IMG/VR virus record: IMGVR_UViG_3300042453_005404
Coordinates: 62,001 to 126,000 of that record
Direction: 5' to 3' (one strand)
DNA: 64,000 bases
This document shows positions 46,961-63,737 of this stretch, in pieces. Both the position numbers and the translations under genes were made by a program. How positions within the stretch are numbered: position 1 is the stretch's first letter; each line of letters opens with the position of its first letter. A model generated the notes under the pieces. The model searched no databases. It was not told the DNA's origin and saw only the letters and a program-made list of their open reading frames with translations.

Positions 46961-47011
46961 ACCCTTGAAATCATAGAGAAAAAACGTTAACAAAAAAAGG
47001 TAAAAAATACC

Positions 47012-47046
47012 TTTAGATATTCGTTAACGTTTGGTATTCTATGAGT
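47012..47046 (+). promoter_or_regulatory. Leaderless sigma70-like promoter
   Basis: TTTAGA-17-TATTCT-6-ATG(47047). Confidence 0.8.
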
Positions 47047-48117
47047 ATGAAGATCGGAATCGAAATCGAGTTCTACAGTCCCAAAAACATCACCGACACC
47101 ATTGCGGCTCTTCGTCGCAAGGTTCGTGGTCTTTCTATTGGTAGCTACGGTAGCTCTGGTTGGAAGATCGTGAGTGATGGTTCTCTTGCAACCATCGATA
47201 GCTTTCACGGCATGGAGCTTGTGTCTCCTGTGCTTGATACCGACAAGGCTGCTAACCTGCGCATGGTTCGCAAGGTGTGCGCTGCGTTGCAAGCTATGGG
47301 TAGCACGGTGAATAACTGCTGCGGTCTGCATGTTCATGTGGATGGTACCGATCTGTCGGTTGAGCAGATTAAGACGATTTTTCATCGCTATACCAAGTTT
47401 GAGGGTATGATCGATCTCATGGTTCCTGCTAATCGGCGTGGTACTAACGTGTACTATACCAAGGGTGGTACCAACATCATCAACAATGTGGAAAACTGTC
47501 AAACCATGAACGCTCTTATGCGTGTGCTGCCTGATCGTTACTACAAGGTGAACCTGTGTGCTCTGGGTCGTCATGGCACGATTGAGTTTCGGCAACACTC
47601 TGGGTCGATCAATGCGGATACCATTCTTAACTGGGTTGAGTTTCTTACTTCGTTTGTCGAAGCTTCCAAGATCACTCCTGCGGCTCCGCAACGTGCTCTT
47701 CGTGGTCGTCCGGCTTCTGGTACGGGCATGGCTGCTGGTTGCCGCAAGGTTTACGATGTGTTCATGGCTTCATACAACAACGGTGGTGGTACCTTGTACC
47801 TTGCCACGATTGCTAACCGTACCGGTCTTGCCATTAACAGCGTAAAGGTTGCAATCTCGACTCTTAAGACCAAGCACGGGATTGTGATTAAGAAGACTGC
47901 TGGACAGCAGCGTGGTGCTACCAACCCGATGTACACGATTGCAAACCCTCATGCGCAGCCTCGTTTGAATCCTGTGCGTTCTACTCGTAGCACTGCCAGT
48001 GCTCCCGCTACTCCTACTGACACGATTTGGCGTGGTGTTAGCAAGACTCTCAAGGCTTACTACGTCGAGCGCATTCAAGAGCTTTCGGGCTTCGGTGTTC
48101 AGAACGTTTCGCTGTGA
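47047..48117 (+). CDS. Putative amidoligase (Amidoligase_2/COOH-NH2 ligase) with C-terminal wHTH-like domain
   Basis: IGIEIEF, WKIVSDGSL, ELVSPVL, CGLHVHV, RYYKVN, TIEFRQHSG. Confidence 0.85.
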   Translation: MKIGIEIEFYSPKNITDTIAALRRKVRGLSIGSYGSSGWKIVSDGSLATIDSFHGMELVSPVLDTDKAANLRMVRKVCAALQAMGSTVNNCCGLHVHVDGTDLSVEQIKTIFHRYTKFEGMIDLMVPANRRGTNVYYTKGGTNIINNVENCQTMNALMRVLPDRYYKVNLCALGRHGTIEFRQHSGSINADTILNWVEFLTSFVEASKITPAAPQRALRGRPASGTGMAAGCRKVYDVFMASYNNGGGTLYLATIANRTGLAINSVKVAISTLKTKHGIVIKKTAGQQRGATNPMYTIANPHAQPRLNPVRSTRSTASAPATPTDTIWRGVSKTLKAYYVERIQELSGFGVQNVSL

Positions 48118-48449
48118 TGGTTGATGAAATGAACAATCTGCAACTTGGCAAAATGTATTTGGTTAAAGAGCTTTTCTGGCTTCTTTATCCAACGAAAGGT
48201 CTGGCAGGAGGGGCTGCGGACGGCTTCGGGGGGCATGGTTGGCGGTTGAAGAAGCTGACGACTGCTTATGAAACTGCAAAATGGGAGAGCGAAAGTTTCA
48301 ACTGCAATGTTGATGTTGTTGAAGAAAACACTTGCTTTGTTTTGCTTGAAGTAGACAACGGTTATTTCAAACTTCTTAACTCAAACGGTAACATTGGTTG
48401 GACTTGGGGTAGGGATTTCTTCGAGCATTTCGAACTTGTCAAGGAATAA
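48114..48449 (+). CDS. Hypervariable SH3-like protein, subfamily A copy 1
   Basis: LGKMYLVKE.FW.LYPTK-[variable]-CNV.VVEENTC.VLLE...GNIGW...FELVKE. Confidence 0.85.
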   Translation: MMVDEMNNLQLGKMYLVKELFWLLYPTKGLAGGAADGFGGHGWRLKKLTTAYETAKWESESFNCNVDVVEENTCFVLLEVDNGYFKLLNSNGNIGWTWGRDFFEHFELVKE

Positions 48450-48452
48450 GCA

Positions 48453-48767
48453 ATGAACAATCTGCAACTTGGTAAGATGTATTTGGTTAAAGAGTTTTTC
48501 TGGTTTCTTTTTCCAACAAAAGAACTAGCGGAGCGCCAGTGCAGGTGGTCGAGGGCGGGGGCCTCGACATCGGGGGCGACGGGGGTGGCAAAAGTGTTAA
48601 GCCAAAATTTTAAATGCAACATTTTTGTTGTTGAACCAAAGACTTGCTTTGTTTTGCTTGAAGTAGATGATGATTATTACAAGCTTCTTGACTCAAATGG
48701 TAACATTGGTTGGATTTTTAGTTGGGATTTCTCTGGTTGTTTCGAACTTGTAAAGGATTTATGTTGA
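48453..48767 (+). CDS. Hypervariable SH3-like protein A2
   Basis: Same framework; G-rich insert 48528-48587. Confidence 0.85.
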   Translation: MNNLQLGKMYLVKEFFWFLFPTKELAERQCRWSRAGASTSGATGVAKVLSQNFKCNIFVVEPKTCFVLLEVDDDYYKLLDSNGNIGWIFSWDFSGCFELVKDLC

Positions 48768-48798
48768 GAATATTTTCAGAGTATGATATACTTTTGAT
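48764..48798 (+). promoter_or_regulatory. Leaderless sigma70-like promoter (duplicated at 49431)
   Basis: TTGAGA-17-TATACT-6-ATG(48799). Confidence 0.8.
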
Positions 48799-49116
48799 AT
48801 GCTACAAATCGGTAAGATGTATTTGGTTAAAGAGTATTTCTGGTTTCTTTTTCCAACAAAAGAACTGGCGGTGGGGGCGATCGATCGCTTCGAGGGGCGG
48901 GCGTCGCAGGGCTGGGCGGCGACGGGGGCGGTGGTGGCAAAAGTGTTAAGCGAACGTTATAAATGCAACATTTTTGTTGTTGAACCAAAGACTTGCGTTG
49001 TTTTGCTTGAAATGGATGAAACCGAACATTGCTATAAGCTTCTTGATTGTAATGGAAACATTGGTTGGACTCGTTGTTGGAGTTTCGCCTCCTATTTCGA
49101 GCTTGTAAAGGAATAA
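48799..49116 (+). CDS. Hypervariable SH3-like protein A3
   Basis: Same framework; insert 48865-48936 is 57/72 GC. Confidence 0.85.
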   Translation: MLQIGKMYLVKEYFWFLFPTKELAVGAIDRFEGRASQGWAATGAVVAKVLSERYKCNIFVVEPKTCVVLLEMDETEHCYKLLDCNGNIGWTRCWSFASYFELVKE

Positions 49117-49122
49117 GCAACA

Positions 49123-49434
49123 ATGCAACTTGGTAAGATGTATTTGGTTAAAGATTGGTTTTGGTTTCTTTATCCAACAAAAGAACTGGCAAGGACGCCT
49201 GCGGCGAAGGCGAGCAGGGCGATGCGGCCCACGAGGGCGAGGGCGGGGATGGATGCGAAATGGTTGAGCCAAGAATTTAAATGCAACGTTGGTGTTGTTG
49301 AACCAAACACTTGCGTTGTGTTGCTTGAAGTAGATAATGGTTATTTTAAGCTTCTTGATTCGAATGGTAACATTGGTTGGATTATTTGTTGGAATGTCTC
49401 CAAAAATTTCGAACTTGTAAGGGATTTATGTTGA
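49123..49434 (+). CDS. Hypervariable SH3-like protein A4
   Basis: Same framework; insert 49191-49258. Confidence 0.85.
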   Translation: MQLGKMYLVKDWFWFLYPTKELARTPAAKASRAMRPTRARAGMDAKWLSQEFKCNVGVVEPNTCVVLLEVDNGYFKLLDSNGNIGWIICWNVSKNFELVRDLC

Positions 49435-49465
49435 GAATATTTTCAGAGTATGATATACTTTTGAT
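49431..49465 (+). promoter_or_regulatory. Leaderless sigma70-like promoter
   Basis: TTGAGA-17-TATACT-6-ATG(49466). Confidence 0.8.
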
Positions 49466-49711
49466 ATGCTACAAATCGGTAAGATGTATAAAGTTCCGTG
49501 GTATGTTGAAGCTGACGAGTACATAGCTGGACGACTGATTGAGCGAATCAAACTAAAAGATGGCGATCTTGTTGTTGTTGTTAGCATGGAAGAATACCGT
49601 ATGGGCGGGGAGATTCGTTGGGACACAAAACTGCTGACAGGTGACGGAAGACTTGTATACGTTTCGATATCGCAACCGGGGTCTGCATACTGGAAAAAAG
49701 CACATGAATAG
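49466..49711 (+). CDS. Divergent SH3-like family member
   Basis: MLQIGKMY...LKDGDLVVVV...KLLTGDG. Confidence 0.7.
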   Translation: MLQIGKMYKVPWYVEADEYIAGRLIERIKLKDGDLVVVVSMEEYRMGGEIRWDTKLLTGDGRLVYVSISQPGSAYWKKAHE

Positions 49712-50003
49712 AAATCTTCAAATCGGAAAGCTGTATAAAACACCTTGGAAGACTTCTTCTTACGGAGCTTACATCAAGTTTGATGATCATGGCATGGTGC
49801 CTGACTACAACAGAAGCATCGACCTTCCAGATGGCGCATATGTTGTTTTGCTTGAAGTTAACGTGAATAAAGCTGAATATTTCTATAACAATAGAAAAGC
49901 CAACACATACGTTCTTAAGGTTCTAACAGAGGATGGTGCTGTTGCATATGTTACGTGCACAGAAGCTGGTTTGGATTACTGGAAAAAGGTTGTTCGTCCA
50001 TAA
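49704..50003 (+). CDS. Divergent SH3-like family member
   Basis: LQIGKLY...VVLLEV...KVLTEDG; start at MNRNLQ. Confidence 0.7.
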   Translation: MNRNLQIGKLYKTPWKTSSYGAYIKFDDHGMVPDYNRSIDLPDGAYVVLLEVNVNKAEYFYNNRKANTYVLKVLTEDGAVAYVTCTEAGLDYWKKVVRP

Positions 50004-50017
50004 AACTTAGTTAATCC

Positions 50018-50052
50018 TTTAGATATTCATATTCTTATGGTATTCTATATAT
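50018..50052 (+). promoter_or_regulatory. Leaderless sigma70-like promoter
   Basis: TTTAGA-17-TATTCT-6-ATG(50053). Confidence 0.8.
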
Positions 50053-50427
50053 ATGAAGCAGAAGAAGGCTGTTGTTCGTCGCAAAGGTTCGGTTTCCAGC
50101 AAAGTCAAACAACTGGATTGGATCATGCAGTTTATCATTCGCATGAATCCTTGTGCGATTTGTGGTGGTTCCTTGGCTGATGGGTACAATCCTCGTTATC
50201 CGGGTAAAAGCATCACGCTGCATCATTCCATCGGAAGCCGTGAAGTTGACGATTGGGAGAATCTGGAGTATGTAGCTGGTATGGTGCTGTGTCATTCTAC
50301 ATGCCACAAGAGCTATCATTTGAAGCGCAGACACATGGATGCGGGCAAGGATGTAAACGAGGGCGAGGTTGCGATCATGGAAAGCAATATTGCCAAGGTT
50401 GTGAAGAAGCAGAGGAAAGTAAAATGA
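50053..50427 (+). CDS. HNH endonuclease-like protein
   Basis: CAICG...TLHH...LCH..CH..YH. Confidence 0.7.
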   Translation: MKQKKAVVRRKGSVSSKVKQLDWIMQFIIRMNPCAICGGSLADGYNPRYPGKSITLHHSIGSREVDDWENLEYVAGMVLCHSTCHKSYHLKRRHMDAGKDVNEGEVAIMESNIAKVVKKQRKVK

Positions 50428-50642
50428 ATCACACGATTGGAAAAATGCATCAGTTTGTAGCCGTTCAACTACCGATTTATAATAGGATCGGAGACGTTCC
50501 GTTTGCTTACTTGGTACAGAATGAAGTTGTTGTTTTTCTTTCGAAAACAGATAAATACGTAAAGGTACTATTTGACGATGGCACCGTTGGAATAGTGCCT
50601 TATTTTCCAGAACGTGATCATTGGGTTGAATACACCGGTTAG
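50424..50642 (+). CDS. Divergent SH3-like family member
   Basis: TIGKMH...VVVFLS...VKVLFDDG.VG; start at MNHTIG. Confidence 0.65.
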   Translation: MNHTIGKMHQFVAVQLPIYNRIGDVPFAYLVQNEVVVFLSKTDKYVKVLFDDGTVGIVPYFPERDHWVEYTG

Positions 50643-50656
50643 GAGAACGTAAAACA

Positions 50657-50986
50657 ATGTCCGAATATATTGAATCCGAGACAAACTGTTGGAACAAATC
50701 ACCAATGAAACAAGGTAAACTGTATTACGGGCTTTGTGATCGAGAGGTGATCGAAGAAAAGCTTTTACCTCATTTTTTTGATGCTCATGAGATCAATGAT
50801 GTGATTGAGGTAGTAGACGCAGCATCACCGGTTGTATTCTTGGAAAAGACAATCACAAGGCGAGAGGATGGATACGGTGGTAGAGAAAGGTATCAAACCT
50901 TTATAAAGATTCTTACACCTGCTGGAAATATTGGTTGGGTTGTTTGGTTTGAAGGCGATTGGAAGGAAGTAAAATCATGTCAATAA
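50657..50986 (+). CDS. Divergent SH3-like family member
   Basis: QGKLYY...VVFLEK...KILTPAGNIGWV. Confidence 0.7.
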   Translation: MSEYIESETNCWNKSPMKQGKLYYGLCDREVIEEKLLPHFFDAHEINDVIEVVDAASPVVFLEKTITRREDGYGGRERYQTFIKILTPAGNIGWVVWFEGDWKEVKSCQ

Positions 50987-51321
50987 CATTCTACGATCAG
51001 AACAATCCAGCAAAGTACAACGATGATGGAGATCAAATCGGTGGTGGTATCGAAGTAAACTTCGCAAACGGCAACGCATACACTGTGCTTTCTCTCATGG
51101 GTTTGTGCGGCAAAGATAATCCCGATCTTTGTGGAGAAATGAACGGTCACGACTTTCGTAAATGCGCATATCGTGCGTTAGCAACGTTGGATATGATAAA
51201 TGATGAAAGTCGATTTAACGTTGATCCCATCGATGTAGCACAACATTGGGGATACGCAAAAGAACGAATCAAACGGCTTTTAACGGTTTTTGCCGACGCT
51301 GAAACTGTTTGTTGGGGGTAA
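50977..51321 (+). CDS. Hypothetical protein
   Basis: EVNFANGNA..VL..MGL pattern; coupled start. Confidence 0.6.
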   Translation: MSITFYDQNNPAKYNDDGDQIGGGIEVNFANGNAYTVLSLMGLCGKDNPDLCGEMNGHDFRKCAYRALATLDMINDESRFNVDPIDVAQHWGYAKERIKRLLTVFADAETVCWG

Positions 51322-51323
51322 AG

Positions 51324-51486
51324 GTGGCATACTTTACCATAGGTAAACTGTATCAAAACGTTACAAAAAACGAAGCTTCTTGCTGATGATGGCACAGTTT
51401 ATCAGGCAGCGATTTTGAAAAACACACGTTACATACAAATCTGGTTTAAACCCGTTTCGTCATTTTCGGACATAGTTAAGTTATGA
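51324..51486 (+). pseudogene. Possible deleted/frameshifted SH3-like family remnant
   Basis: Frame 1 TIGKLYQ joins, after an A6 run (51365-70), frame 2 KLLADDGTVY; middle of the domain absent. Confidence 0.4.
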
Positions 51487-51828
51487 ATGATAAAAATATT
51501 GACAGGTGCCGAGCTAGTTCCCGGCAAAATGTATACTATTTGGGGGCGTTTGAATCGTGATACGTGGCCCGCATATCATCAACGACCAACTCTTCAATCA
51601 CCATCAACTGTTGCAACTGTTGCTCCATTGTTTCCATTGGAGCCATTTGTGTTTTTAGAACGCACGCCAAGTGAGTTTAGATGGAATGAAACCGATCCAA
51701 TGTATGACTACAAAATATTGACTTGTGACGGCGTTGTGGGCTGGCTATGCTTTCATGACGATGATTTGTCTGCTTTGGGTATTGGTTTTCGTGAATATGA
51801 TCCAAAAGACTTTGAAGTAAACCTTTAA
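51487..51828 (+). CDS. Divergent SH3-like family member
   Basis: LVPGKMY...FVFLE...KILTCDGVVGWL. Confidence 0.7.
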   Translation: MIKILTGAELVPGKMYTIWGRLNRDTWPAYHQRPTLQSPSTVATVAPLFPLEPFVFLERTPSEFRWNETDPMYDYKILTCDGVVGWLCFHDDDLSALGIGFREYDPKDFEVNL

Positions 51829-51868
51829 ATCGTAGCAACAACTTGATATACTAAAACTAGTTAAACCT

Positions 51869-51979
51869 ATGAGCATTCAAAGCATAATTTCTGCCACAGT
51901 GTTTGCAAGTGTTTTCTTTTTGTGGATATTCACTTGTCCAATGATAACACACAAAAAGTGTTGCTGTTGTAAAAACTAA
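51869..51979 (+). CDS. Small membrane peptide with Cys-rich tail (36 aa)
   Basis: Hydrophobic helix then KKCCCCKN; promoter TTTAAA(51824)-17-TATACT upstream. Confidence 0.4.
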   Translation: MSIQSIISATVFASVFFLWIFTCPMITHKKCCCCKN

Positions 51980-51995
51980 CAAAAGGAAGCAAATC

Positions 51996-52193
51996 GTGCG
52001 TAACTATGAAAAACAAAAAGATCTTGTTAATGCCAATCTTGTTGAAGGTGAGTTGATCAACTACAAAAACAAAGTTTGCAGAGTTTCTATATCCCGTGGT
52101 GGCCCTTTAGACAAACCAAAAGTAAGTGTTGTTTTAACTCCTATGCCTCAAATCACAATCACAGAAGACACAGAAATCATTGTTTCTACATAA
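51996..52193 (+). CDS. Hypothetical protein
   Basis: AAGGA RBS, GTG start. Confidence 0.5.
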   Translation: MRNYEKQKDLVNANLVEGELINYKNKVCRVSISRGGPLDKPKVSVVLTPMPQITITEDTEIIVST

Positions 52194-52328
52194 ACGTTTA
52201 TGACTTTCCGCCATGAGCTTTATGTTGTTTTTTGGATTGTTGTTGTTTTGTACGCATATGCGTTAGGTTTCGCACTCGCAAAATGCTAATATGCCTTGAT
52301 TACAAGCACAAACAAAAAATAAAATACC

Positions 52329-52363
52329 TTTAGATGTTCATGAACATATGATATTCTATATGC
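52329..52363 (+). promoter_or_regulatory. Leaderless sigma70-like promoter
   Basis: TTTAGA-17-TATTCT-6-ATG(52364). Confidence 0.8.
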
Positions 52364-53503
52364 ATGATGAACGTTCACCCGGCTCTTCGTTTCTCGTTTG
52401 ACCATCTTCGCACGGCTCTTATGACCCGTGTGGATTCTGGTGCAATCAACATCACTCGCAAGGGTTCTCTGGCCCTTTTCAACTATTCCAAGGATTGTCA
52501 GTTTGAGCATCTTTGGGATGATTATACCATCATGGCCCGTGGTCTTATTCTCGACATGGAGAATGAGTCTATTGTGGCTCTTCCTTTTCCCAAGTTCTTC
52601 AATGCGTCGGAGAAGGAGGGTGCTAGTGTTGTCAAGTTTGATGCTCCCTTTGATGCGTATACCAAGATGGACGGATCGCTGGGTATCGTGTATTTCCACA
52701 ATGGTTCATGGCACGTTGCAACCCGTGGTTCGTTTACGTCCGAACAGTCTGTGTGGGCAGAGAAGTGGCTGCACGATAACCTCAAGCCTTATCACCAGCT
52801 TGATCAGAATGTGACATATCTTTGTGAGATTATCTATGACAGCAACCGTATTGTTATCAACTACCCTTTTGAGGGTTTGGTGATGCTTGGTGCTTATAAC
52901 CGTGTTACCGGCATTGAGCTTGACTATGATCGTGATTTGCGTCCGTTGTGTGAGCGTATCGGTATGATGCTTGCAGAGCGTCACCAGTTCACTTCATTTG
53001 TTGCTGCACAGGAGTTTGTCAAGACTCTTCCCGGCAACGAGGAAGGTTTCGTTATTCGTTTTCGGGATTCTGGCGAGCGTGTAAAGCTCAAGGGTTCTGA
53101 ATATTGCTCTTTGCACAAGATGATTAGCAACATTACTCCTTTGGCTATCTGGGAGCTTTTGTGTGCGGGTTACTCCATTGAAGATTACAAGAAGGCTTTG
53201 CCGGAAGAGTTTTGGGATGAGGTTGACGAGATTGTTGGTCATTTCCAGCGTCGTGCTGCTTGTGTTATGCTGGATGTTGTGAACCTTTATTCCGAGGTTT
53301 CTGATTTGTCTGACAAGGATCTTGGTTTGAAGCTGGCTGGCGAGTTCAAGCGTCGTGAGAATGCTTCGTTGCTGTTCCCTTATCGTAAGAAGGGAACGGC
53401 TTTGGTTCACGGTTTGGTGATGAAGTCTTTGCGGCCTACTGGAAACGTGATTGAGGGATATGTGCCGTCTGCCATGCTCCAGCGTTCTCAGTCGGAGGAA
53501 TGA
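52364..53503 (+). CDS. RNA ligase (T4 Rnl1-like)
   Basis: ARGLI...PFPKFFN, KMDGSLG, ATRGSF, EGFVI, VKLKG.EY. Confidence 0.9.
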   Translation: MMNVHPALRFSFDHLRTALMTRVDSGAINITRKGSLALFNYSKDCQFEHLWDDYTIMARGLILDMENESIVALPFPKFFNASEKEGASVVKFDAPFDAYTKMDGSLGIVYFHNGSWHVATRGSFTSEQSVWAEKWLHDNLKPYHQLDQNVTYLCEIIYDSNRIVINYPFEGLVMLGAYNRVTGIELDYDRDLRPLCERIGMMLAERHQFTSFVAAQEFVKTLPGNEEGFVIRFRDSGERVKLKGSEYCSLHKMISNITPLAIWELLCAGYSIEDYKKALPEEFWDEVDEIVGHFQRRAACVMLDVVNLYSEVSDLSDKDLGLKLAGEFKRRENASLLFPYRKKGTALVHGLVMKSLRPTGNVIEGYVPSAMLQRSQSEE

Positions 53504-53505
53504 TC

Positions 53506-53811
53506 ATGCAACTCGGCAAGATGTATTTGGTTAAAGAGCTTTTCTGGTTTCTTTATCCAACAAAAGAACGGGCGGAGTATGGGCGTGCGAGGGCGGCGTC
53601 CGTTGCGGCGATGGCGTGGCGGTGGGCGGCGAATAATGCAAAAGTGTTAAGCGAACGTTATAAATGCAACGTTTTTGTTGTTGAAGAAAACACTTGCGTT
53701 GTTTTGCTTGAAGTAGATGATGATTATTACAAGTTTCTTGATTGTAATGGAAACATTGGTTGGATTATTTGTCGGGATTTCTCCAACTATTTCGAGATTG
53801 CAAAGGAATAA
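53506..53811 (+). CDS. Hypervariable SH3-like protein A5
   Basis: Same framework; insert 53569-53631. Confidence 0.85.
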   Translation: MQLGKMYLVKELFWFLYPTKERAEYGRARAASVAAMAWRWAANNAKVLSERYKCNVFVVEENTCVVLLEVDDDYYKFLDCNGNIGWIICRDFSNYFEIAKE

Positions 53812-53817
53812 GCAACA

Positions 53818-54138
53818 ATGCAACTTGGTAAGATGTATTTGGTTAAAGAGCTTTTCTGGCTTCTCTTTCCAACAAAAGAAGTAGCGTGCGACCTTATGGC
53901 GATAGGCTGGGACAGCCCACTGGAGGCAACAGTGGAGAAGGGGCAGGCTTATCAAGAAGCAGACTATATAAGTGAACATATGTGTTGCGACGTTGCTGTG
54001 GTGGAAGAAAATACTTGTTTTGTGTTGCTTGAGCAAGATGAAAAGCTTTTCAAACTTCTTGATTGCAACGGTAACATTGGTTGGATATGGTGTAGGTGTT
54101 TGTCTTTTTCCAAGTATTTCGAACTTGTAAAGGAATAA
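53818..54138 (+). CDS. Hypervariable SH3-like protein A6
   Basis: Same framework; insert less GC-rich. Confidence 0.85.
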   Translation: MQLGKMYLVKELFWLLFPTKEVACDLMAIGWDSPLEATVEKGQAYQEADYISEHMCCDVAVVEENTCFVLLEQDEKLFKLLDCNGNIGWIWCRCLSFSKYFELVKE

Positions 54139-54144
54139 GCAACA

Positions 54145-54447
54145 ATGCAACTTGGTAAGATGTATTTGGTTAAAGAGTATTATTGGTTTATGTTTCCAAC
54201 AAAAGAACTAGCGGAGGCCATCGCCGCTGGACGGCGGGCGCTGGCCGCACTCGATGCGGGCGCTGCGGGACGGAGGGTGGCGAGCGAAGATTATAACTGC
54301 AACAACGTTTCTTTTGTTGAAGAAAACACTTACGTTGTTTTGCTTGAACAAGACAATGATTATATCAAAATTCTTGACTCAAATGGAAACATTGGTTGGA
54401 TTGTTTGTTGGGATTTTTCCGACTTTTTCGAACTTGTAAAGGAATAA
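54145..54447 (+). CDS. Hypervariable SH3-like protein A7
   Basis: Same framework; insert from 54211. Confidence 0.85.
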   Translation: MQLGKMYLVKEYYWFMFPTKELAEAIAAGRRALAALDAGAAGRRVASEDYNCNNVSFVEENTYVVLLEQDNDYIKILDSNGNIGWIVCWDFSDFFELVKE

Positions 54448-54453
54448 GCAACA

Positions 54454-54750
54454 ATGCAACTTGGTAAGATGTATCGTTTTACAGAAAGAGCAAAACGAGC
54501 TTGCATAAGGTATGCAATCAAAAACCGTTGGCCTCTCACGTTCTCTTCCGAGGTTAGTCTCGCAAAAGGTCGAGTGCGGGCGCAATATCCATTGGATTCA
54601 TGCATTGTTGTGTTAGAGTCTCACGAAACAACAACTTCTGGAAAGCTTTTGTCTGGTAAAACATCACGCAGACTTAAGGTTTTACTTCCTGATGGTAAGA
54701 TTGGTACGATGTATGTGGATACAACAGAATGGGAACAGGTAACTGAATGA
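54454..54750 (+). CDS. Divergent SH3-like family member sharing only MQLGKMY with the array
   Basis: Identical upstream junction, then divergent; KVLLPDGKIG. Confidence 0.7.
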   Translation: MQLGKMYRFTERAKRACIRYAIKNRWPLTFSSEVSLAKGRVRAQYPLDSCIVVLESHETTTSGKLLSGKTSRRLKVLLPDGKIGTMYVDTTEWEQVTE

Positions 54751-54814
54751 TTATGGTACTTTGCTTTGCTGCTAGCCTTTGTTTGGCGATTTGCTCACGA
54801 AAGCAAATCGTTCG

Positions 54815-54994
54815 ATGAAAACCATTAAACTACCAGAAACCATTGAACGTTCAACAGTGCTACTTGTTTTTGGCTTAATCGTGTTTTCTGGCATGATCGG
54901 TTTTGCTTTTGGTGCTGATGCCGGTTATGCCAAAGGATTCCAAGATGGTTCACAAAGCCGCACTGTTTCTCCCATACCTCTTCAAATGCCCTAA
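54815..54994 (+). CDS. Small membrane protein
   Basis: TM helix followed by GY.KG..DG. Confidence 0.5.
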   Translation: MKTIKLPETIERSTVLLVFGLIVFSGMIGFAFGADAGYAKGFQDGSQSRTVSPIPLQMP

Positions 54995-55026
54995 AATCCA
55001 GCGGTTTAAGAAAAAGCAATAATACG

Positions 55027-55061
55027 TTTAGATATTCGTGAACGTATGCTATTCTAAAAGC
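55027..55061 (+). promoter_or_regulatory. Leaderless sigma70-like promoter
   Basis: TTTAGA-17-TATTCT-6-ATG(55062). Confidence 0.8.
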
Positions 55062-55256
55062 ATGAAGAACAACACGGTTTCTGCTCGTCGTCTCGCTCGT
55101 TCGATGGAGTCTAGCGTCAAGCTTATCGCTCGCAAGTTTGCACGCTTGAACGAAGCACAGCGTCTTCGTGCAATGCAGATTATTGCGAACATGGATGATC
55201 TTAGGTCGTTTGAGTCCATCGTTCGTAACTCGTTTGTGTGCAACACGGAGCTCTGA
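55062..55256 (+). CDS. Hypothetical protein
   Basis: Start defined by promoter geometry (MKNNTV). Confidence 0.6.
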   Translation: MKNNTVSARRLARSMESSVKLIARKFARLNEAQRLRAMQIIANMDDLRSFESIVRNSFVCNTEL

Positions 55257-55259
55257 AAC

Positions 55260-55466
55260 ATGGGATACGTAAAAGACATGGTGCTTCACAAGCAAGAAGA
55301 GCTTGCTGGTGAGATTCACGAAGATGCTTTTCTCGCTTATCTGGAAGAGATGGAGCAGATTCAAAACAATCACATTCTGGCAGATCATGTGATTCTTAGC
55401 AATGGCAAGCGTTGCTATATTCAAGCGAACTGTTATCCTGCTGACGGTGTGTGTGAGTGCAAGTAA
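55260..55466 (+). CDS. Hypothetical protein
   Basis: MGYVKDM.. N-terminus; TAATG-coupled to A8. Confidence 0.6.
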   Translation: MGYVKDMVLHKQEELAGEIHEDAFLAYLEEMEQIQNNHILADHVILSNGKRCYIQANCYPADGVCECK

Positions 55467-55741
55467 TGCAACTCGGTAAGATGCATTTGGTTAAAGAGTG
55501 GTTTTGGTTTCTTTATCCAACAAAAGAAAAGACGTGGCGCTCGGGGCCAGCGGCGAGGGCGGATAATGCAAAATTGTTAAGCGAACATGTCCAATGCAAC
55601 GTTTTTGTTGTTGAACCAAACACTTGTGTTGTTTTGCTTGAAGTAGATAATGGTTATTTTAAGCTTCTTGATTCAAACGGAAACATTGGTTGGATTCGTT
55701 GTTGGAGTTTCGCCTCCTATTTCGAGCTTGTAAAGGAATAA
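55466..55741 (+). CDS. Hypervariable SH3-like protein A8
   Basis: Same framework; shortest insert 55529-55561. Confidence 0.85.
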   Translation: MQLGKMHLVKEWFWFLYPTKEKTWRSGPAARADNAKLLSEHVQCNVFVVEPNTCVVLLEVDNGYFKLLDSNGNIGWIRCWSFASYFELVKE

Positions 55742-55747
55742 GCAACA

Positions 55748-56047
55748 ATGCAACTTGGTAAGATGTATTTGGTTAAAGATTGGTTTTGGTTTCTTTATCC
55801 AACAAAAGAACTGGCGATGCGTGGGCGGAGCTCGGGGGAGGGGGCGATGACGCTGGCGAACGGGCGGCTGGGCGCAGAATGGTTGAGCCAAGAATTTAAA
55901 TGCAACGTTGGTGTTGTTGAACCAAACACTTGCTTTGTCTTGCTTGAAGTAGATGAAGTATATTTCAAGGTTCTTGATTGTAATGGAAACATTGGTTGGA
56001 CTTATTGCTTTGATTTCTCTGGTTATTTCGAACTTGTAAAGGAATAA
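55748..56047 (+). CDS. Hypervariable SH3-like protein A9
   Basis: Flanks identical to A4; insert 55816-55877. Confidence 0.85.
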   Translation: MQLGKMYLVKDWFWFLYPTKELAMRGRSSGEGAMTLANGRLGAEWLSQEFKCNVGVVEPNTCFVLLEVDEVYFKVLDCNGNIGWTYCFDFSGYFELVKE

Positions 56048-56051
56048 AGCA

Positions 56052-56351
56052 ATGAACGATCTTCAACTCGGTAAGATGTATTTGGTTAAAGAGTGGTTTT
56101 GGTTTCTTTATCCAACAAAAGAACTGGCGGCGGGGTTCTCGTCGCCGTCGAGGGCGGAGTGGTGGTGTAATGCAAAAGTGTTAAGCGAACGTTATAAATG
56201 CAACGTTTTTGTTGTTGAACCAAACACTTGCGTTGTTTTGCTTGAAGTAGATAATGGTTATTTTAAGCTTCTTGATTCAAACGGTAACATTGGTTGGATA
56301 TGGTGTAGGTGTTTGGCTTTTTCCAAGCATTTCGAACTTGTCAAGGAATAA
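56052..56351 (+). CDS. Hypervariable SH3-like protein A10
   Basis: Insert 56124-56165, 13/14 codons NNG. Confidence 0.85.
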   Translation: MNDLQLGKMYLVKEWFWFLYPTKELAAGFSSPSRAEWWCNAKVLSERYKCNVFVVEPNTCVVLLEVDNGYFKLLDSNGNIGWIWCRCLAFSKHFELVKE

Positions 56352-56355
56352 AGCA

Positions 56356-56688
56356 ATGCAACTTGGTAAGATGTATTTGGTTAAAGAGTATTGTTGGTTT
56401 CTTTATCCAACAAAAGAACTGGCCTCGACGACGGGGCCACGGTGGTCGAGCGTGAGGCGGTGGCCCTCCGACGAGGAGCGCACGGTGGCTTATCGAGATG
56501 CAAAATGGTTGAGCCAAGCATTTAAATGCAACGTTGGTGTTGTTGAACCAAAAACTAGTTTTGTCTTGCTTGAACAAGACAAGGATCATTTCAAGGTTCT
56601 TGATTCAAACGGAAACATTGGTTGGATTCGTAGCGATGATTTTTCGAAAAATTTCAAGGTTTTGAATGAAAAGAAGAATAACCTTTAG
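56356..56688 (+). CDS. Hypervariable SH3-like protein A11
   Basis: Start at MQLGKMY (56356); insert from 56419. Confidence 0.85.
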   Translation: MQLGKMYLVKEYCWFLYPTKELASTTGPRWSSVRRWPSDEERTVAYRDAKWLSQAFKCNVGVVEPKTSFVLLEQDKDHFKVLDSNGNIGWIRSDDFSKNFKVLNEKKNNL

Positions 56689-56718
56689 ATATGTCAAATA
56701 TTTTGGTATTATAGAAGT
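56684..56718 (+). promoter_or_regulatory. Leaderless sigma70-like promoter
   Basis: TTTAGA-17-TATTAT-6-ATG(56719). Confidence 0.8.
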
Positions 56719-57477: not shown

Positions 57478-57489
57478 AAAGAGCATAAT

Positions 57490-58148: not shown

Positions 58149-58161
58149 AAAGAAGACGACT

Positions 58162-59364
58162 ATGAGCGAACGTTATCAGATTATAATCAAGGCTGGGGAG
58201 CATACTTTTCATTTCAAAACCAAGACAAGGGTTGGGGAGTTTTGGAACTTCTCAGAGGAGATGAAGGAGCATATTGATTGGGAGCAGATGGCTATTGGAT
58301 TGGACAAAAAGACCAAGGAAGTTTTGGACTCTGTGAGTTGTCCTAAGTGTAAGTCTAGCACACAGGAAACATTTATGGAGGGTCAGTATCTTGTTCCTTC
58401 TAGTGACAGGGATGCTATTATCAAGGCTTGCACTAAATGTCAGTGGTCTAGGTTGGAGCGACTATGAGTGATATAAAGTTTCCAGTTGTATCAAAAGAAA
58501 TTATTGACAAAGTTTTTACTTCTGATGATGGATGGACTACTGTATATGAGGGTCCAACCATCGTAAGCAGTGCAAGTATTATGCCACAGATTTATGTGCC
58601 GCTTCAAGTTTCTCATATATTCAAGAAGGAAGATAAAGAATGAAACGCTATTATGCCAAGGCTGACACATGGTTCAAGGAAGGAACGGAAGCGTTTAGAG
58701 AAGAAGAGATGTTTCCTTATGGTAGTTTGACTGATGGTGAAACTGGAGAGAAAACGGGCTCAGCGATTTATCGTGGGATTTACGTTATTGGATCTGGTGG
58801 CAGCTATCTTGATAAATCATACAAAGAAGGGGAAGAAGTTGAGATGCGAGAACATTGCTCGGACGATGAGTTTCTTGTGGTAGAGGAATAGGTTATGGGA
58901 ATAAATGGGGATACCAAGGATATTGGTTGGATTCAATGTAGCCAATGTGGGTGGGGTTGTGAAGTACATCGTTCAGAAGTTGAGATTGGGGATTATGTAG
59001 ATCGGCAATCATGTCCTGATTGTGGTCTTGGGCCATGTGAGATTGATTGGGATTATCCAGATGGTAAGGGTTGGGTAGCAGAAAAAGTTTGACTTATTGA
59101 TAATGGTATGATAGTTTAAACCTATCGAAAGCAAAGGAAAATATGAAAGCAACGTTTAAGTCATTTGTCGAAGGCGAGAAGCGATTCATTGTAGTAGGTG
59201 AGCCTCATGTATATCAGAATGGATTCCTTGTCACTTGTATTGATACAAGCACTGGAGAAACCGAAAGCAAAACTATCGCAAGCTCTGAGAGACTTGATCT
59301 ATGTGAGTTCGAACTAAAATGCCTTGGTAAAGTTGTTTGGGAAAAGAAGCTTATCCCAGTATGA
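58162..59364 (+). CDS. Run of five small hypothetical proteins (58162-58467 Zn-ribbon, 58464-58643, 58640-58891, 58895-59092 Zn-ribbon, 59143-59364)
   Basis: Coupled ORFs; CxxC pairs in two; 58464-58643 read manually. Confidence 0.55.
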
Positions 59365-59756
59365 CAGAGATAGAAGAAGAAAGAATGTGGCTCAAGTGTT
59401 TGGAGCTGGAACGAGAGAATAAACGTCTTCGTGAAATAATGAACATCGGATCGCTTTATACAGTGAAGAAGTATTTTTGGTTGCTTTTTCCAACAAAAGC
59501 CCTCACCGTGGGTGACGAACTGCACGCCGATGGCCACGGCCACGCCATCCCCTTCGCCGCCTTCGCCTCCATCGCCGCCGATTATTGGAGCAGACGATAC
59601 AACTGTGAAGTTACTTATTTTTGTCCTGATTCAATCGTTGTTTTCCTTGAAGAAGATGGAAATTACAAGAAAGTTCTGACTTCAGATGGAAAGATTGGTT
59701 GGATTTGGTTTGCTGAAGAATACTACAACGATTGCTTTGAGGAAGTAAATCCATGA
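59361..59756 (+). CDS. Hypervariable SH3-like protein, subfamily B copy 1 (with 26-aa N-terminal extension; core starts 59439)
   Basis: MNIGSLY.VKK.FW.LFPTK-[C-rich insert 59499-59579]-YWS...CEV.YF.PDS..VFLEEDG...KVLTSDGKIGW. Confidence 0.85.
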   Translation: MTEIEEERMWLKCLELERENKRLREIMNIGSLYTVKKYFWLLFPTKALTVGDELHADGHGHAIPFAAFASIAADYWSRRYNCEVTYFCPDSIVVFLEEDGNYKKVLTSDGKIGWIWFAEEYYNDCFEEVNP

Positions 59757-60052
59757 ACATTGGAAGCCTTTATAGGGTTAAGAAGTTTTATTGGTTGCTT
59801 TTTCCAACAAAAGAAATCGCCGCTGTAGCAGAACACCCCGCCTCCTCCCCCAGCGCCGCCGCCCTCGCCGCCGCCAGCGCCTATTGGAGCGGCCAGCTGA
59901 ACTGTGAAGTAACTTGTTTTTCTCCTGATTCCATTATTGTATTTCTTGAAGAAGATGGGAAATACAAGAAGGTTCTGACTTCTGAAGGAAGAATCGGATG
60001 GACTTGGTTTATTGAATCATATAACGAATGCTTTGAGGAAGTAAATCCATGA
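59753..60052 (+). CDS. Hypervariable SH3-like protein B2
   Basis: 16 consecutive NNC codons at 59834-59881. Confidence 0.85.
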   Translation: MNIGSLYRVKKFYWLLFPTKEIAAVAEHPASSPSAAALAAASAYWSGQLNCEVTCFSPDSIIVFLEEDGKYKKVLTSEGRIGWTWFIESYNECFEEVNP

Positions 60053-60363
60053 ACATTGGATCGCTTTATACAGTGAAGAAGTATTTTTGGTTTCTTTTTT
60101 CAACAAAAGCCGTCGCCGCCGCCGCATCCGACCCACCGTCCACCGCCGCATCCGACGCACCGTCCGCCGCCGCCGCCGGAGAAGCCGCTGCTTATTTGAG
60201 CAGACGATACGACTGTGAAGTTACTTATTTTTCTCCTGATTCCATCGTTGTTTTCCTTGAAAATGATGGAAAACTCAAGAAAGTATTGACTTCTGATGGA
60301 AAGATTGGTTGGACTTGGTTTAGTGAAACCTATAACGAATGCTTTGAGGAAGTAAATCCATGA
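60049..60363 (+). CDS. Hypervariable SH3-like protein B3
   Basis: C-rich insert with an internal 24-nt duplication. Confidence 0.85.
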   Translation: MNIGSLYTVKKYFWFLFSTKAVAAAASDPPSTAASDAPSAAAAGEAAAYLSRRYDCEVTYFSPDSIVVFLENDGKLKKVLTSDGKIGWTWFSETYNECFEEVNP

Positions 60364-60665
60364 ACATTGGATCGCTTTATACAGTGAAGAAGTGGTCTTG
60401 GTCACTTTTTCCAACAAAGGAAACTGCCGCCGCCGCCGCCGCAAGCAGCCCCGCCGCCGCAGGAGCCGCTCCCGACGCCGCTCCCGCCGCTGATTATTGG
60501 AGCAAACAGTTAAACTGCAATGTAACCTACTTTTCTCCTGATTCCTATATTGTCTTCTTGGAAGAAGATACGAAGTTCAAGAAAGTTCTTACTTCTACTG
60601 GAAAGCTTGGTTGGGTTTGGTTTGATGAAAGTTATAATCATTGTTTTGAGGAAGTATCGTCGTGA
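60360..60665 (+). CDS. Hypervariable SH3-like protein B4
   Basis: (GCC)5 run and GCCGCTCCC duplication in the insert. Confidence 0.85.
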   Translation: MNIGSLYTVKKWSWSLFPTKETAAAAAASSPAAAGAAPDAAPAADYWSKQLNCNVTYFSPDSYIVFLEEDTKFKKVLTSTGKLGWVWFDESYNHCFEEVSS

Positions 60666-60925: not shown

Positions 60926-60929
60926 TATC

Positions 60930-60964
60930 TTGATATTCAGATTAACGTTTGCTATACTGTATTC
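60930..60964 (+). promoter_or_regulatory. Leaderless sigma70-like promoter
   Basis: TTGATA-17-TATACT-6-ATG(60965). Confidence 0.8.
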
Positions 60965-62890: not shown

Positions 62891-62984
62891 TCTAATGTTC
62901 AACACATCAAAAGACGAGTTTTACACTCTTATTATCAACGAAGAAGACTTCAAAAACCCCTAAATATCCAGCAAAAAGAATATC

Positions 62985-63199: not shown

Positions 63200-63203
63200 T
63201 CCC

Positions 63204-63733: not shown

Positions 63734-63737
63734 TCTT

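What the first reader, a model, noticed from the sequence alone, without database searches (positions are those of the whole stretch)
48741..54475. GGTAAGATGTAT (GKMY) behaves as a crossover/cassette junction
Seen: the divergent gene at 49466 shares an 82-nt block (previous gene end, promoter, MLQIGKMY) with A3 and then becomes unrelated immediately after GGTAAGATGTAT. The divergent gene at 54454 likewise shares TTCGAACTTGTAAAGGAATAAGCAACAATGCAACTTGGTAAGATGTAT with the array and diverges at the same point. Inference: the mobile unit runs from GKMY to the next GKMY, so cassettes are added or excised by recombination at this motif, as in integron or shufflon-like arrays. No recombinase is visible in this window.
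Basis: partly seen in the sequence, partly recalled or inferred. Interest (0 to 1): 0.7.

Follow-up and report, generated by a model that had tools for sequence, protein, structure and literature searches.

The report
Phage paralog arrays shuffled by homology
The 'GKMY junction' is the conserved first beta-strand of a family of small SH3-like proteins that an uncultured freshwater jumbo phage carries in tandem arrays. The arrays gain, lose and mix units by ordinary homologous recombination at many positions, not at an integron- or shufflon-like site.

Summary
An 83-nt block (48740-48822 = 49407-49489, one mismatch) and a 49-nt block (54117-54165 = 54426-54474) both end exactly after GGTAAGATGTAT, in front of two divergent genes.

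The integron/shufflon reading does not hold:
- The two divergent genes (D1 at 49466, D2 at 54454) are remote paralogs of the same roughly 100-aa superfamily.
- GK[ML]Y is that superfamily's N-terminal motif, the first strand of an SH3-like barrel. It shows synonymous variation and is less conserved as DNA than other framework words.
- Between array units, identical tracts run straight through the motif (120 nt exact, 49071-49190 = 55696-55815).
- Segment-wise nearest neighbours disagree, and the PHI test has p<0.0005.
- Related strains from other metagenomes carry 0-4, 1-3 and 2-8 units in the three arrays. Their chimeric units have crossovers at the head/hypervariable border, in mid-gene and at NGNIGW.
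- The 260-kb contig has no tyrosine or serine recombinase, reverse transcriptase, RecT or ERF. It does have a RecA-family gene.

Best reading: unequal homologous recombination and gene conversion in a tandem gene family. GKMY is simply where homology between subfamilies ends. Two promoter-bearing blocks act somewhat like T4-type PeSL cassettes.

One unexplained extra: each unit holds a GC-rich hypervariable island whose codon usage is foreign to the genome.

The parts
48126..49434 (+). Array A. It holds four tandem A-type paralogs: A1 48126-48449, A2 48453-48767, A3 48799-49116 and A4 49123-49434. It lies directly downstream of the amidoligase gene (47041-48117).
   Evidence: ORFs; alignment; HMM. 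Copy number is 0, 1, 2, 3 or 4 in related strains.
48740..48822 (+). P block copy 1. It contains the 3' end of A2 (..FELVKDLC*), a sigma70-like promoter (48764-48792, TTGAGA-17-TATACT with TG), and the head ATG CTA CAA ATC + GGTAAGATGTAT of A3.
   Evidence: 68 nt exact, or 83 nt with 1 mismatch, to copy 2. Best promoter-like match in 47.9-57.6 kb.
49407..49489 (+). P block copy 2. It holds the same sequence, here between A4 and the divergent gene D1. The P-D1 arrangement is shared by the distant relative L012/L013 and by L019, L028 and L074, so it is probably the older copy.
49466..49711 (+). D1, a divergent 81-aa gene (MLQIGKMYKVPW..). It is a remote member of the same superfamily and a paralog of its neighbour D1b.
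   Evidence: A clean HMM built without it gives E 5.3e-4. It is 41-44% identical to D1b-type genes. hhalign of D-type vs A-type gives E 3.5e-5. The AF2 model is all-beta with pLDDT 90.
49704..50003 (+). D1b, a D-type paralog with its own head codons (CAAATC GGAAAGCTGTAT). In L012/L013 an A-type body sits at this position.
   Evidence: clean HMM E 9.4e-8
53506..54447 (+). Array B. Units are B1 53506-53811, B2 53818-54138 and B3 54145-54447. It lies downstream of the RNA ligase gene (52364-53503).
   Evidence: Related strains hold 1-3 units, including a B1|B3 chimera in L074.
54454..54750 (+). D2, a divergent 98-aa gene (MQLGKMYRFTE..). It is the fixed right end of array B in every strain seen. 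D2-like genes elsewhere keep GK[ML]YRF with other codons or other upstream DNA.
   Evidence: Clean HMM E 6.8e-8. The same junction occurs in L019, L066 and L074. A D2-like gene follows another array at genome 50775-50990 with head GGAAAGCTTTAT. L051/L084 carry GKMYRFKN in an unrelated context.
55466..56688 (+). Array C. Units are C1 55466-55741, C2 55748-56047, C3 56052-56351 and C4 56356-56688. It lies upstream of the Metallophos phosphatase gene (56719-57477).
   Evidence: L009 has 2 units and L019/L020 have 7; 8 are inferred from gene sizes in two further contigs.
49071..49190 (+). The longest exact tract shared by two units (= 55696-55815). It runs from the A3/C1 tail through the stop codon, spacer, ATG and GKMY to the start of the hypervariable segment of A4/C2.
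48861..48947 (+). Example of a GC-rich hypervariable (HV) island inside a unit (A3). The others are at 48189-48251, 48521-48598, 49183-49263, 53564-53639, 54202-54291, 55807-55885, 56120-56170 and 56415-56495. C-rich ones lie at 59499-60503 in the F-type array.
   Evidence: In the model the HV forms a helix-loop-helix between strands 2 and 3.
59361..60665 (+). F-type array. It holds four paralogs with head IGSLY and Ala/Pro/Ser-rich, C-rich HV segments.

Best explanation
The window lies in a hyperplastic region of an uncultured freshwater jumbo phage. That region is filled with at least 33 small paralogous genes (about 80-110 aa) of one superfamily. The superfamily has an SH3-like beta-barrel fold, and its first strand is the motif GK[ML]Y.

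The A-type subfamily sits in tandem arrays. In these arrays the last codons of one gene (GTA AAG GAA TAA), a 3-6 nt spacer, and the head of the next gene form one conserved stretch. The AAGGA in it probably serves as the ribosome-binding site of the next gene (inference).

The arrays evolve by general homologous recombination between units: unequal crossing-over, deletion between direct repeats, and gene-conversion patches. The phage's own RecA-family recombinase is the likely catalyst (inferred). Crossovers fall wherever two units are alike.

Each array ends on its right in a gene of a different subfamily (D1, D2). Such a gene shares with the array only the upstream gene's tail and the ancestral GK[ML]Y head. 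Conversion or crossover tracts that enter from the left must therefore stop at the last shared codon. That produces a sharp 'junction' after GGTAAGATGTAT. It is an edge-of-homology effect, not a recombination site.

The A3 head (MLQI + promoter) is a copy of the D1 head block. The two 83-nt promoter blocks now flank A3-A4 as direct repeats and can delete or insert the 667-bp segment between them. This is comparable to PeSL-mediated shuffling in T4-type phages.

Shown: the family relationship, the mosaicism, the copy-number variation, the crossover positions, and the absence of site-specific recombinase genes on the contig.

Inferred: which enzyme acts, the direction of the A3/D1 head transfer, and the ribosome-binding-site role of the tail codons.
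For: 1. D1, D1b and D2 belong to the superfamily. An HMM built without them scores 5.3e-4, 9.4e-8 and 6.8e-8, and hhalign gives E 3.5e-5. The A3 model (pLDDT 91) places GKMY at strand 1. Its PDB Foldseek hits are dominated by SH3 domains, though weakly.
2. Native D-type and D2-type heads encode GK[ML]Y with other codons (GGAAAGCTGTAT, GGGAAAATGTAC, GGAAAGCTTTAT).
3. The 12-mer occurs in 8 of 14 A units, against 12-13 of 14 for two other framework 12-mers.
4. A 120-nt exact tract crosses GKMY. Tracts end at +11 only when the partner is D-type.
5. Nearest neighbours differ by segment. The A3 tail matches the C1 tail at 98%. The C3 tail matches the B2 tail at 94%, while their mid segments match at 69%. 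PHI: 0 of 2000 permutations reach the observed value; Rm = 25.
6. Chimeric units occur in other strains, mapped at nucleotide level:
- L019 has an A2 head, A4 HV+mid, an A2 patch, then an A4 tail.
- L028 has an A3 head joined to A4.
- L074 has B1|B3 in mid-gene and C1|C3 at NGNIGW.
- L019 has B1 carrying an A4-type tail.
7. Copy number varies between strains.
8. The D1 and D2 junctions are the same in all strains, so they are old and fixed.
9. No PF00589, PF00239, PF00078, RecT or ERF was found. A RecA-family gene is present at E 1.5e-50.
10. Contigs in two independent runs join 48754 to 49422 through the 68-nt repeat.
11. The two best sigma70-like sites of the region lie in the P blocks.
Against: - At the A3/D1 junction the two partners share only about 12-14 identical nt on the right side. 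That is short for RecA-type exchange, so this event may have been microhomology-mediated.
- One further junction lies inside the 12-mer (L019, a truncated P block fused to ..AGATGTAT of B3). Another lies about 15-20 nt upstream of it (L012 vs W after D1). The 5' end of the genes may therefore be somewhat enriched for junctions. This is expected from selection for intact ORFs, but it was not tested statistically.
- The contig is only about 70% complete, so a recombinase could be encoded elsewhere.
- The Logan joints run through a repeat longer than the assembler's word and could be graph artefacts.
- No experiment or long read shows recombination in action.
Confidence: 0.75

Rival explanations
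1. GGTAAGATGTAT is a site for a dedicated recombinase, and units from GKMY to GKMY are inserted or excised as cassettes, as in integrons or shufflons.
For: Two array ends (D1, D2) break exactly after the motif. One illegitimate junction lies inside it. Unit number varies between strains.
Against: - Crossovers are scattered over the framework.
- Tracts pass through the motif.
- The motif shows synonymous variation and is not the best conserved word.
- All copies are direct, with no inverted repeat or attC-like structure.
- No Tyr or Ser recombinase was found in 260 kb.
- The 'cassettes' are all paralogs, and the D1/D2 junctions are invariant among strains.
Confidence: 0.04
2. No recombination at the junctions. 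The shared blocks are kept identical by purifying selection alone (promoter, ribosome-binding site, N-terminal strand), and the genes diverged vertically.
For: The block holds a strong promoter-like site. It also holds a probable ribosome-binding site and a structurally important strand.
Against: - The block is 68 nt exact, including spacer and synonymous sites. Yet the adjoining tails of A2 and A4 are 78% alike, and the same block differs at 3-4 positions in L012.
- A3 alone among A units carries the D-type codons CTA CAA ATC.
- Widespread mosaicism shows that recombination is active.
Confidence: 0.06
3. The junctions with non-homologous bodies (A3/D1, D2, L019 P|B3) arose by microhomology-mediated illegitimate recombination or replication template switching at the short GKMY identity. 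Strand exchange by a RecA-type enzyme was not involved. Ordinary homologous recombination explains only the exchanges between A-type units.
For: Only 12-14 nt are shared at the right edge of the A3/D1 block. The L019 junction uses 2-3 nt of microhomology.
Against: The left side of each block lies in long homology (the tail of an A-type gene). A conversion tract ending at the end of homology therefore needs no separate mechanism. This rival cannot be told apart from the best explanation with sequence data alone.
Confidence: 0.15

Closest known systems
PeSL (promoter-early stem-loop) cassettes of T4-type phages (Arbiol et al. 2010, PMC2839356; Comeau et al. 2014, PMC4122927)
   Same: - Both occur in hyperplastic regions full of small genes of unknown function.
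- In both, a conserved stretch of about 70-100 bp carrying a sigma70-like promoter is repeated between genes and serves as a substrate for homologous recombination that deletes, inserts or swaps the flanked genes.
- The 667-bp A3-A4 segment lies between two such direct repeats, and contigs show the single-repeat form.
   Different: - The block has no stem-loop terminator.
- It has only two copies and overlaps coding sequence on both sides.
- Most exchanges here use the coding framework of the paralogs, not a regulatory cassette.
- Mini-circles could not be looked for.
Tandem multigene families evolving by unequal crossing-over and gene conversion (concerted evolution; 'genomic accordions' of poxviruses - from general knowledge)
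   Same: Both show tandem paralogs, fast copy-number change between close strains, mosaic units, and homogenised framework sequence.
   Different: Here each unit keeps a private hypervariable island, so the units are not homogenised as wholes. No selective driver is known.
Integron gene cassettes
   Same: Both are arrays of small genes in one orientation whose number differs between strains.
   Different: There is no IntI gene and no attC-like imperfect inverted repeat. The units are paralogs with their own translation signals. The junctions are not at one site.
Shufflons (Rci / sfx)
   Same: Both have a short repeated sequence at the borders of variable coding segments.
   Different: Shufflons invert segments between inverted sfx repeats using a tyrosine recombinase. 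Here all 13 copies are direct, no inversion is seen, and there is no recombinase.
Diversity-generating retroelements
   Same: Both give a hypervariable segment inside an otherwise conserved small protein scaffold.
   Different: There is no reverse transcriptase and no template repeat. The HV segments differ in length and are unalignable, rather than differing at adenine positions. Orthologous HVs are mostly identical between strains.
SH3 / SH3b-like small beta-barrels (structure only)
   Same: The model has five to six strands in SH3 order. The conserved N-terminal strand corresponds in position to the ALYDY strand of SH3, and the variable insert sits where the RT loop lies.
   Different: Foldseek E-values are weak (0.03 and above) and there is no Pfam hit. 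The insert is a helix-loop-helix of 25-35 residues. No ligand is known.

Membership tests
Integron | Adjacent IntI-type tyrosine recombinase gene | tested here: not met
   PF00589 has no match in the 260,466-bp contig, while the controls matched in 14 of 14 genomes. The contig is about 70% complete, so absence from the whole genome is not proven.
Integron | attC site (imperfect inverted repeats able to fold) at each cassette border | tested here: not met
   No inverted repeat of 10 nt or more in 48700-49520. The 12-mer is not palindromic.
Integron | All insertions and excisions occur at one defined crossover point | tested here: not met
   Crossovers lie at the head/HV border, in mid-gene and at NGNIGW. 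A 120-nt tract crosses the motif.
Shufflon | Inverted copies of the crossover repeat, with segments found in both orientations | tested here: not met
   All 13 copies are on the + strand. All family genes are on the + strand.
Shufflon | Rci-type tyrosine recombinase | tested here: not met
PeSL-type mobile regulatory cassette | Strong sigma70-like early promoter inside the repeated block | tested here: met
   TTGAGA-17-TATACT with an upstream TG (10 of 12 matches) at 48764-48792 and 49431-49459. These are the two best sites in 9.7 kb. This is a consensus match only; activity was not tested.
PeSL-type mobile regulatory cassette | Stem-loop terminator joined to the promoter | tested here: not met
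   No terminator-like site or inverted repeat in the block.
PeSL-type mobile regulatory cassette | Strains differ by loss or gain of the genes between two cassettes | tested here: inconclusive
   Contigs in runs X2 and X12 join 48754 to 49422 and skip 667 bp. The joint runs through a 68-nt repeat in short-word assemblies. L019 lacks two units, but through a different crossover.
PeSL-type mobile regulatory cassette | Excised mini-circles | not testable with these tools
   Only assembled contigs were available for the runs, with no raw reads.
Tandem gene family under unequal homologous recombination / gene conversion | Tandem paralogs with copy-number variation among close relatives | tested here: met
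   Array A has 0-4 units, array B 1-3 and array C 2-8.
Tandem gene family under unequal homologous recombination / gene conversion | Mosaic units with statistically supported recombination at many positions | tested here: met
   PHI: 0 of 2000 permutations reach the observed value; Rm = 25. Segment nearest neighbours disagree. Chimeras were mapped at nucleotide level.
Tandem gene family under unequal homologous recombination / gene conversion | A general recombinase is available | tested here: met
   RecA-family ORF, E 1.5e-50, with an intein-like insert. Its role in array turnover is inferred.
Diversity-generating retroelement | Reverse transcriptase plus a template repeat matching the variable region | tested here: not met
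   No PF00078 match. The HV segments match only themselves in the genome.
SH3-like fold | Small beta-barrel with SH3 strand order | tested here: inconclusive
   The model is confident (pLDDT 91). Most of the 50 best PDB matches are SH3 domains, but E is 0.03 or above and TM by target is 0.5-0.7. The atlas lists SH3_3 and DUF1653 neighbours. There is no Pfam match.

The most novel reading that the evidence does not exclude
The GC-rich hypervariable islands may not be ordinary divergence. They are 69% GC in a 36% GC framework, and 79% GC at third codon positions. GGG, GCG, GTG and ACG codons are 6-10 times over-used, the borders are sharp, and there are occasional clustered replacements between otherwise identical orthologs. 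These features could be the product of a dedicated, so far undescribed diversification process. Candidates are break-and-fill by an error-prone or template-independent polymerase, or strongly GC-biased repair of heteroduplex. Such a process would write variable loops into an SH3-like scaffold, and homologous recombination between frameworks would then shuffle them. The arrays would be a phage-encoded repertoire of binders.
Probability: 0.1. Interest if true: 0.85.

Novelty: new member of a known kind. Interest (0 to 1): 0.38.

Why it matters
The result removes a tempting but wrong reading: an integron- or shufflon-like system in a phage. In its place it documents a clear natural example of how a jumbo phage turns over a large family of small early-region genes by homology-driven shuffling. 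The crossovers are mapped at nucleotide level in several wild strains.

The family itself has no annotation anywhere. It has at least 33 copies in one genome and about 230 clusters at 50% identity, all found in metagenomic data. It has a confident SH3-like model with a hypervariable surface hairpin. This pattern is expected of proteins that bind changing host targets, for example in host take-over or counter-defence. That makes it a reasonable target for expression and pull-down work once a host is known.

The odd composition of the variable islands is the one feature that could lead to something new.

Tried and rejected
- Megablast of 9.5 kb against GenBank phages found no match.
- A pattern search for relatives in IMG/VR viral contigs found none confirmed. 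Relatives came instead from the protein searches and a metagenome pattern scan.
- Pfam and PHROGs found nothing for eight family members. Pfam also found nothing for the Cys/His-rich ORF 50053-50427.
- A crude count of 'segment A alike, neighbour unlike' pairs was dropped. The head is so conserved, and the upstream segment so shifted by 9-nt indels, that the count measures conservation rather than breakpoints. Nucleotide alignments of individual chimeras were used instead.
- The narrow 8-seed HMM does not detect D1, D1b or D2 (E 0.26-2). The relationship rests on the broader model built without them.
- An hhalign of D2 against alignment A5 is not used as evidence, because A5 contains D2.
- G-quadruplex idea for the HV islands: only one canonical motif lies in an HV. 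Rejected.
- RNA-structure idea for the HV islands: z-scores range from -1.3 to +0.8. Rejected.
- Silent donor cassettes or a template repeat: none on the contig.
- Host-derived DNA as the source of the HV: unlikely. The codon preference (GGG, AGG, TCG) is not that of high-GC bacteria. This rests on general knowledge and was not tested.
- Read-level search for circles or variants: only Logan contigs were available, and they break at the repeats.


Full report
**Where the window lies**

The window is bases 62001-126000 of a 260,466-bp IMG/VR virus contig, with a CheckV completeness of about 70%. It has no close relative among GenBank phages. Its DNA ligase is at most 40% identical to ligases of uncultured phages and phages of alphaproteobacteria. 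The sequence, or near copies of it, is held by at least 20 public runs, most of them from lake, river, reservoir, aquaculture and estuary metagenomes. An 18-kb NCBI metagenome contig is 100% identical to 45815-63811.

**The observation**

GGTAAGATGTAT occurs 10 times exactly and 3 more times with one mismatch. All copies are on the + strand, and 0.26 are expected by chance. Each copy encodes G-K-M-Y at residues 4-10 of a roughly 100-aa gene.

These genes form three tandem arrays in the finding's range:
- Array A has four units: A1 to A4, 48126-49434.
- Array B has three units: B1 to B3, 53506-54447.
- Array C has four units: C1 to C4, 55466-56688.

The block in front of A3 and the block in front of the divergent gene D1 (49466) are identical over 68 nt. 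They match over 83 nt with one mismatch (48740-48822 vs 49407-49489). The head of the divergent gene D2 (54454) is identical over 49 nt to the head of B3. In both cases similarity stops at the last base of the motif.

**What the genes are**

An HMM iterated over the contig's ORFs finds 33 members:
- the A-type units;
- a second subfamily with head IGSLY (59361-60665);
- further arrays outside the window;
- scattered remote members at 49704, 50301, 50657, 51487, 54454 and 57864.

A model built from 31 members, with D1, D1b and D2 left out, scores D2 at 6.8e-8, D1b at 9.4e-8 and D1 at 5.3e-4. A profile-profile comparison of D-type with A-type genes gives E 3.5e-5. The two 'unrelated' genes are therefore remote paralogs. 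They share GK[ML]Y near the start..VVLLE.. in the middle and K[VIL]L..DG.[IV]G near the end.

A profile search of 1.8 billion representative proteins finds 229 clusters, nearly all of about 100 aa and none with a telling name. Pfam and PHROGs give nothing.

AlphaFold2 with a 117-sequence alignment gives a confident model of A3 (pLDDT 91, pTM 0.82). It is a small beta-barrel in which MYLV, the end of GKMY, is strand 1. The hypervariable segment forms a helix-loop-helix between strands 2 and 3. The best PDB matches are mostly SH3 domains, but they are weak (E 0.03 or above). The ESM Atlas neighbours include SH3_3 and DUF1653. D1 also folds as a small all-beta protein (pLDDT 90).

GKMY is thus a structural motif of the protein family.

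**Is the 12-mer special as DNA?**

It is not:
- Native D-type and D2-type heads encode the motif with other codons: GGAAAGCTGTAT (D1b), GGGAAAATGTAC (L009), GGAAAGCTTTAT (a D2-like gene after another array), plus several GGC/AAA/TAC variants in A-type units.
- Among 14 A-type units of this genome the modal 12-mer is present in 8. By comparison, ATTTGGTTAAAG is present in 12 and AACATTGGTTGG in 13.
- There is no inverted repeat around the motif.

**Where recombination has happened inside this genome**

Exact tracts shared by different A-type units do not stop at the motif. The longest is 120 nt (49071-49190 = 55696-55815). It runs from 61 nt upstream of GKMY to 58 nt downstream and ends at the start of the hypervariable segment. 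Tracts end at +11 only when one partner is D1 or D2.

Nearest neighbours change along the gene:
- A3 is closest to A2 in the head, to B1 in the middle and to C1 in the tail (98%).
- C3 and B2 share a tail at 94%, but their middles are only 69% alike.

On the framework columns of 13 units, none of 2000 permutations reached the observed PHI statistic. The four-gamete test needs at least 25 recombination intervals, spread over the whole gene.

**Related strains**

Protein and pattern searches recovered syntenic loci from other metagenomes, all with the gene order amidoligase ... RNA ligase ... Metallophos phosphatase.

Array sizes differ between strains:

| Array | Units seen | Sources |
|---|---|---|
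| A | 0 (L009), 1 (L012/L013), 2 (L019), 3 (L074, and a contig without DNA), 4 (window) | |
| B | 1 to 3 | same calls |
| C | 2 (L009), 4 (window), 7 (L019/L020), 8 (by gene sizes only) | same calls |

The differences were mapped at nucleotide level:
- In L019 the second A unit has the head of A2, then the hypervariable segment and first half of A4, then a 13-nt patch of A2, then the tail of A4.
- In L028 the unit behind the first promoter block has the head of A3 and the rest of A4.
- In L074 the single B unit switches from B1 to B3 in mid-gene. A C unit switches from C1 to C3 inside the NGNIGW codons.
- In L019, B1 carries an A4-type tail plus a truncated promoter block. That block is fused, by 2-3 nt of microhomology, inside the 12-mer of B3.
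- After D1, the window has D1b while L012/L013 has an A-type body. The switch lies about 15-20 nt upstream of the end of GKMY.
- The P-D1 and B3-D2 junctions are the same in every strain. They are old, fixed array ends, not places of current traffic.

That criterion is met.

**Enzymes**

The contig has no match to Phage_integrase, Resolvase, RVT_1, RecT or ERF. The UvsY search was uninformative because its controls were silent. The contig does encode a RecA-family protein (E 1.5e-50) with an intein-like insertion.

**The promoter blocks**

The two best sigma70-like matches in 47.9-57.6 kb (TTGAGA-17-TATACT with TG) lie in the two 83-nt blocks. A3 alone among the A units starts with ATG CTA CAA ATC. 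Those are the codons of every D1 head, and they resemble the heads of D1b-type genes. The P-D1 arrangement is shared with the distant L012/L013 lineage (87.5% identity). The likely history is therefore that the D1 head block was copied in front of an A-type body. The direction of that transfer is inferred.

The two blocks now flank A3-A4 as direct repeats. Logan contigs in two runs from different studies join 48754 to 49422 through the repeat and so lack the 667 bp between. This is what recombination between the blocks would give. However, the joint runs through a repeat longer than the assembler's word and may be an artefact.

The closest described parallel is the PeSL cassette of T4-type phages. 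There, promoter-bearing repeats of about 100 bp in hyperplastic regions mediate deletion, insertion and mini-circle formation by homologous exchange (PMC2839356; PMC4122927). The block here lacks the stem-loop, so it is not a PeSL in the strict sense.

**Mechanism proposed**

The arrays evolve by unequal homologous recombination and gene conversion among tandem paralogs. Crossovers are possible wherever two units are alike. A tract that enters from an A-type tail into the head of a D-type gene must end where the two subfamilies stop being alike, and that is the last codon of the shared GK[ML]Y motif. This produces the sharp junction.

Selection for intact reading frames also favours exchanges in the head when the bodies are not homologous.

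The conserved tail-to-head stretch (..GTA AAG GAA TAA, 3-6 nt, ATG..) contains AAGGA at a ribosome-binding-site distance from the next ATG. This would add selective constraint, but it is an inference that was not tested.

**What else was seen**

Each unit holds a hypervariable island:
- It is 69% GC (45% G), against 36% GC in the framework and 40% in the genome.
- Third codon positions are 79% GC.
- Codon usage is foreign to the genome. GCG makes up 62% of Ala codons against 8% in the genome's long ORFs. GGG makes up 67% of Gly codons against 6%. GTG makes up 82% of Val codons against 15%.
- Most of the contig's 33 short islands of 70% GC or more, about two thirds, lie in these segments. The F-type islands are C-rich rather than G-rich.
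- The islands have no donor copy on the contig and no excess RNA structure.
- They are mostly identical between orthologs of different strains. In 2 of 17 ortholog pairs they show clustered substitutions and indels beside identical flanks.
- Between the window and L009, the island of C1 is replaced with sharp borders, while the island of C4 is conserved.

I have no tested explanation for this composition. GC-biased repair of the only mismatched part of heteroduplexes, or an error-prone fill-in process, are ideas only.

**Verdict**

The cassette-site interpretation is not supported, apart from the general point that units come and go by recombination. The phenomenon is a new example of a known kind: homology-driven modular shuffling in a phage hyperplastic region. 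It occurs in an unannotated family of SH3-like small proteins with a curious hypervariable insert.

Noticed in passing
48189-48251, 48521-48598, 48861-48947, 49183-49263, 53564-53639, 54202-54291, 55807-55885, 56120-56170, 56415-56495; C-rich ones at 59499-60503: Every unit carries a GC-rich hypervariable island: 69% GC against 36% in the framework, and 79% GC at third codon positions. GGG, GCG, GTG, ACG and TCG codons are used 6-10 times more often than in the genome's long ORFs. Most of the contig's 33 GC islands lie in these segments. There is no donor copy and no excess RNA structure. Orthologous islands are mostly stable, with occasional clustered replacement. The origin is unexplained.
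   Followed up: partly
47013-47041, 50019-50047, 55028-55056, 56685-56713: A promoter-like motif, TTAGATAT-N14-TATTMTA, occurs 4 times on the + strand with 0 expected. Each copy lies just upstream of a gene block: amidoligase + array A, 50053.., 55062.. + array C, and the phosphatase. It is probably the phage's own early or middle promoter type.
   Followed up: partly
53407-53503 vs L009:8384-8483: The related strain L009 lacks the RNA ligase gene but keeps its last 100 nt or so in front of its B-type unit (78% over 53407-53766; heads). This is a deletion, or an insertion, with one end inside the ligase gene and unrelated to GKMY.
   Followed up: partly
L114:580-2403 (G000:C1:42079-43902, upstream of the window): A RecA-family recombinase gene is split by an insertion of about 160 aa with a weak intein-splicing match.
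   Followed up: partly
50053-50427: A 124-aa ORF is rich in Cys and His (CAIC..HH..CH..CH..H), reminiscent of a zinc-finger or HNH-type nuclease. It sits between the arrays and has no Pfam match. It is conserved in L009, L019 and L074.
   Followed up: partly
L019:8394-8425: In strain L019 a truncated copy of the promoter block is fused inside the GKMY codons of the B3-type unit (..TTTTCAGA|AGATGTAT..). This removes the -10 box and the start codon, so the gene can start only at the Met of GKMY. It is probably a decaying unit.
   Followed up: partly
G000:C1:49556-50990 (outside the window): Another array of four A-like units ends in a D2-like gene (MLQFGKLYRFNS..) whose head has its own codons. 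The pairing 'A-type array plus terminal D2-type gene' therefore occurs twice in the genome.
   Followed up: partly
59361-60665: A second subfamily (head NIGSLY, tail CFEEVNP) forms a four-unit array in which genes overlap by ATGA. It has Ala/Pro/Ser-rich, C-rich variable segments. It has 6 or more units in L009.
   Followed up: no
whole window: The phage or near relatives appear in at least 20 public runs from 18 studies, most of them freshwater, aquaculture or estuary metagenomes. An NCBI metagenome contig (GCA_043533635.1) is 100% identical over 18 kb.
   Followed up: no
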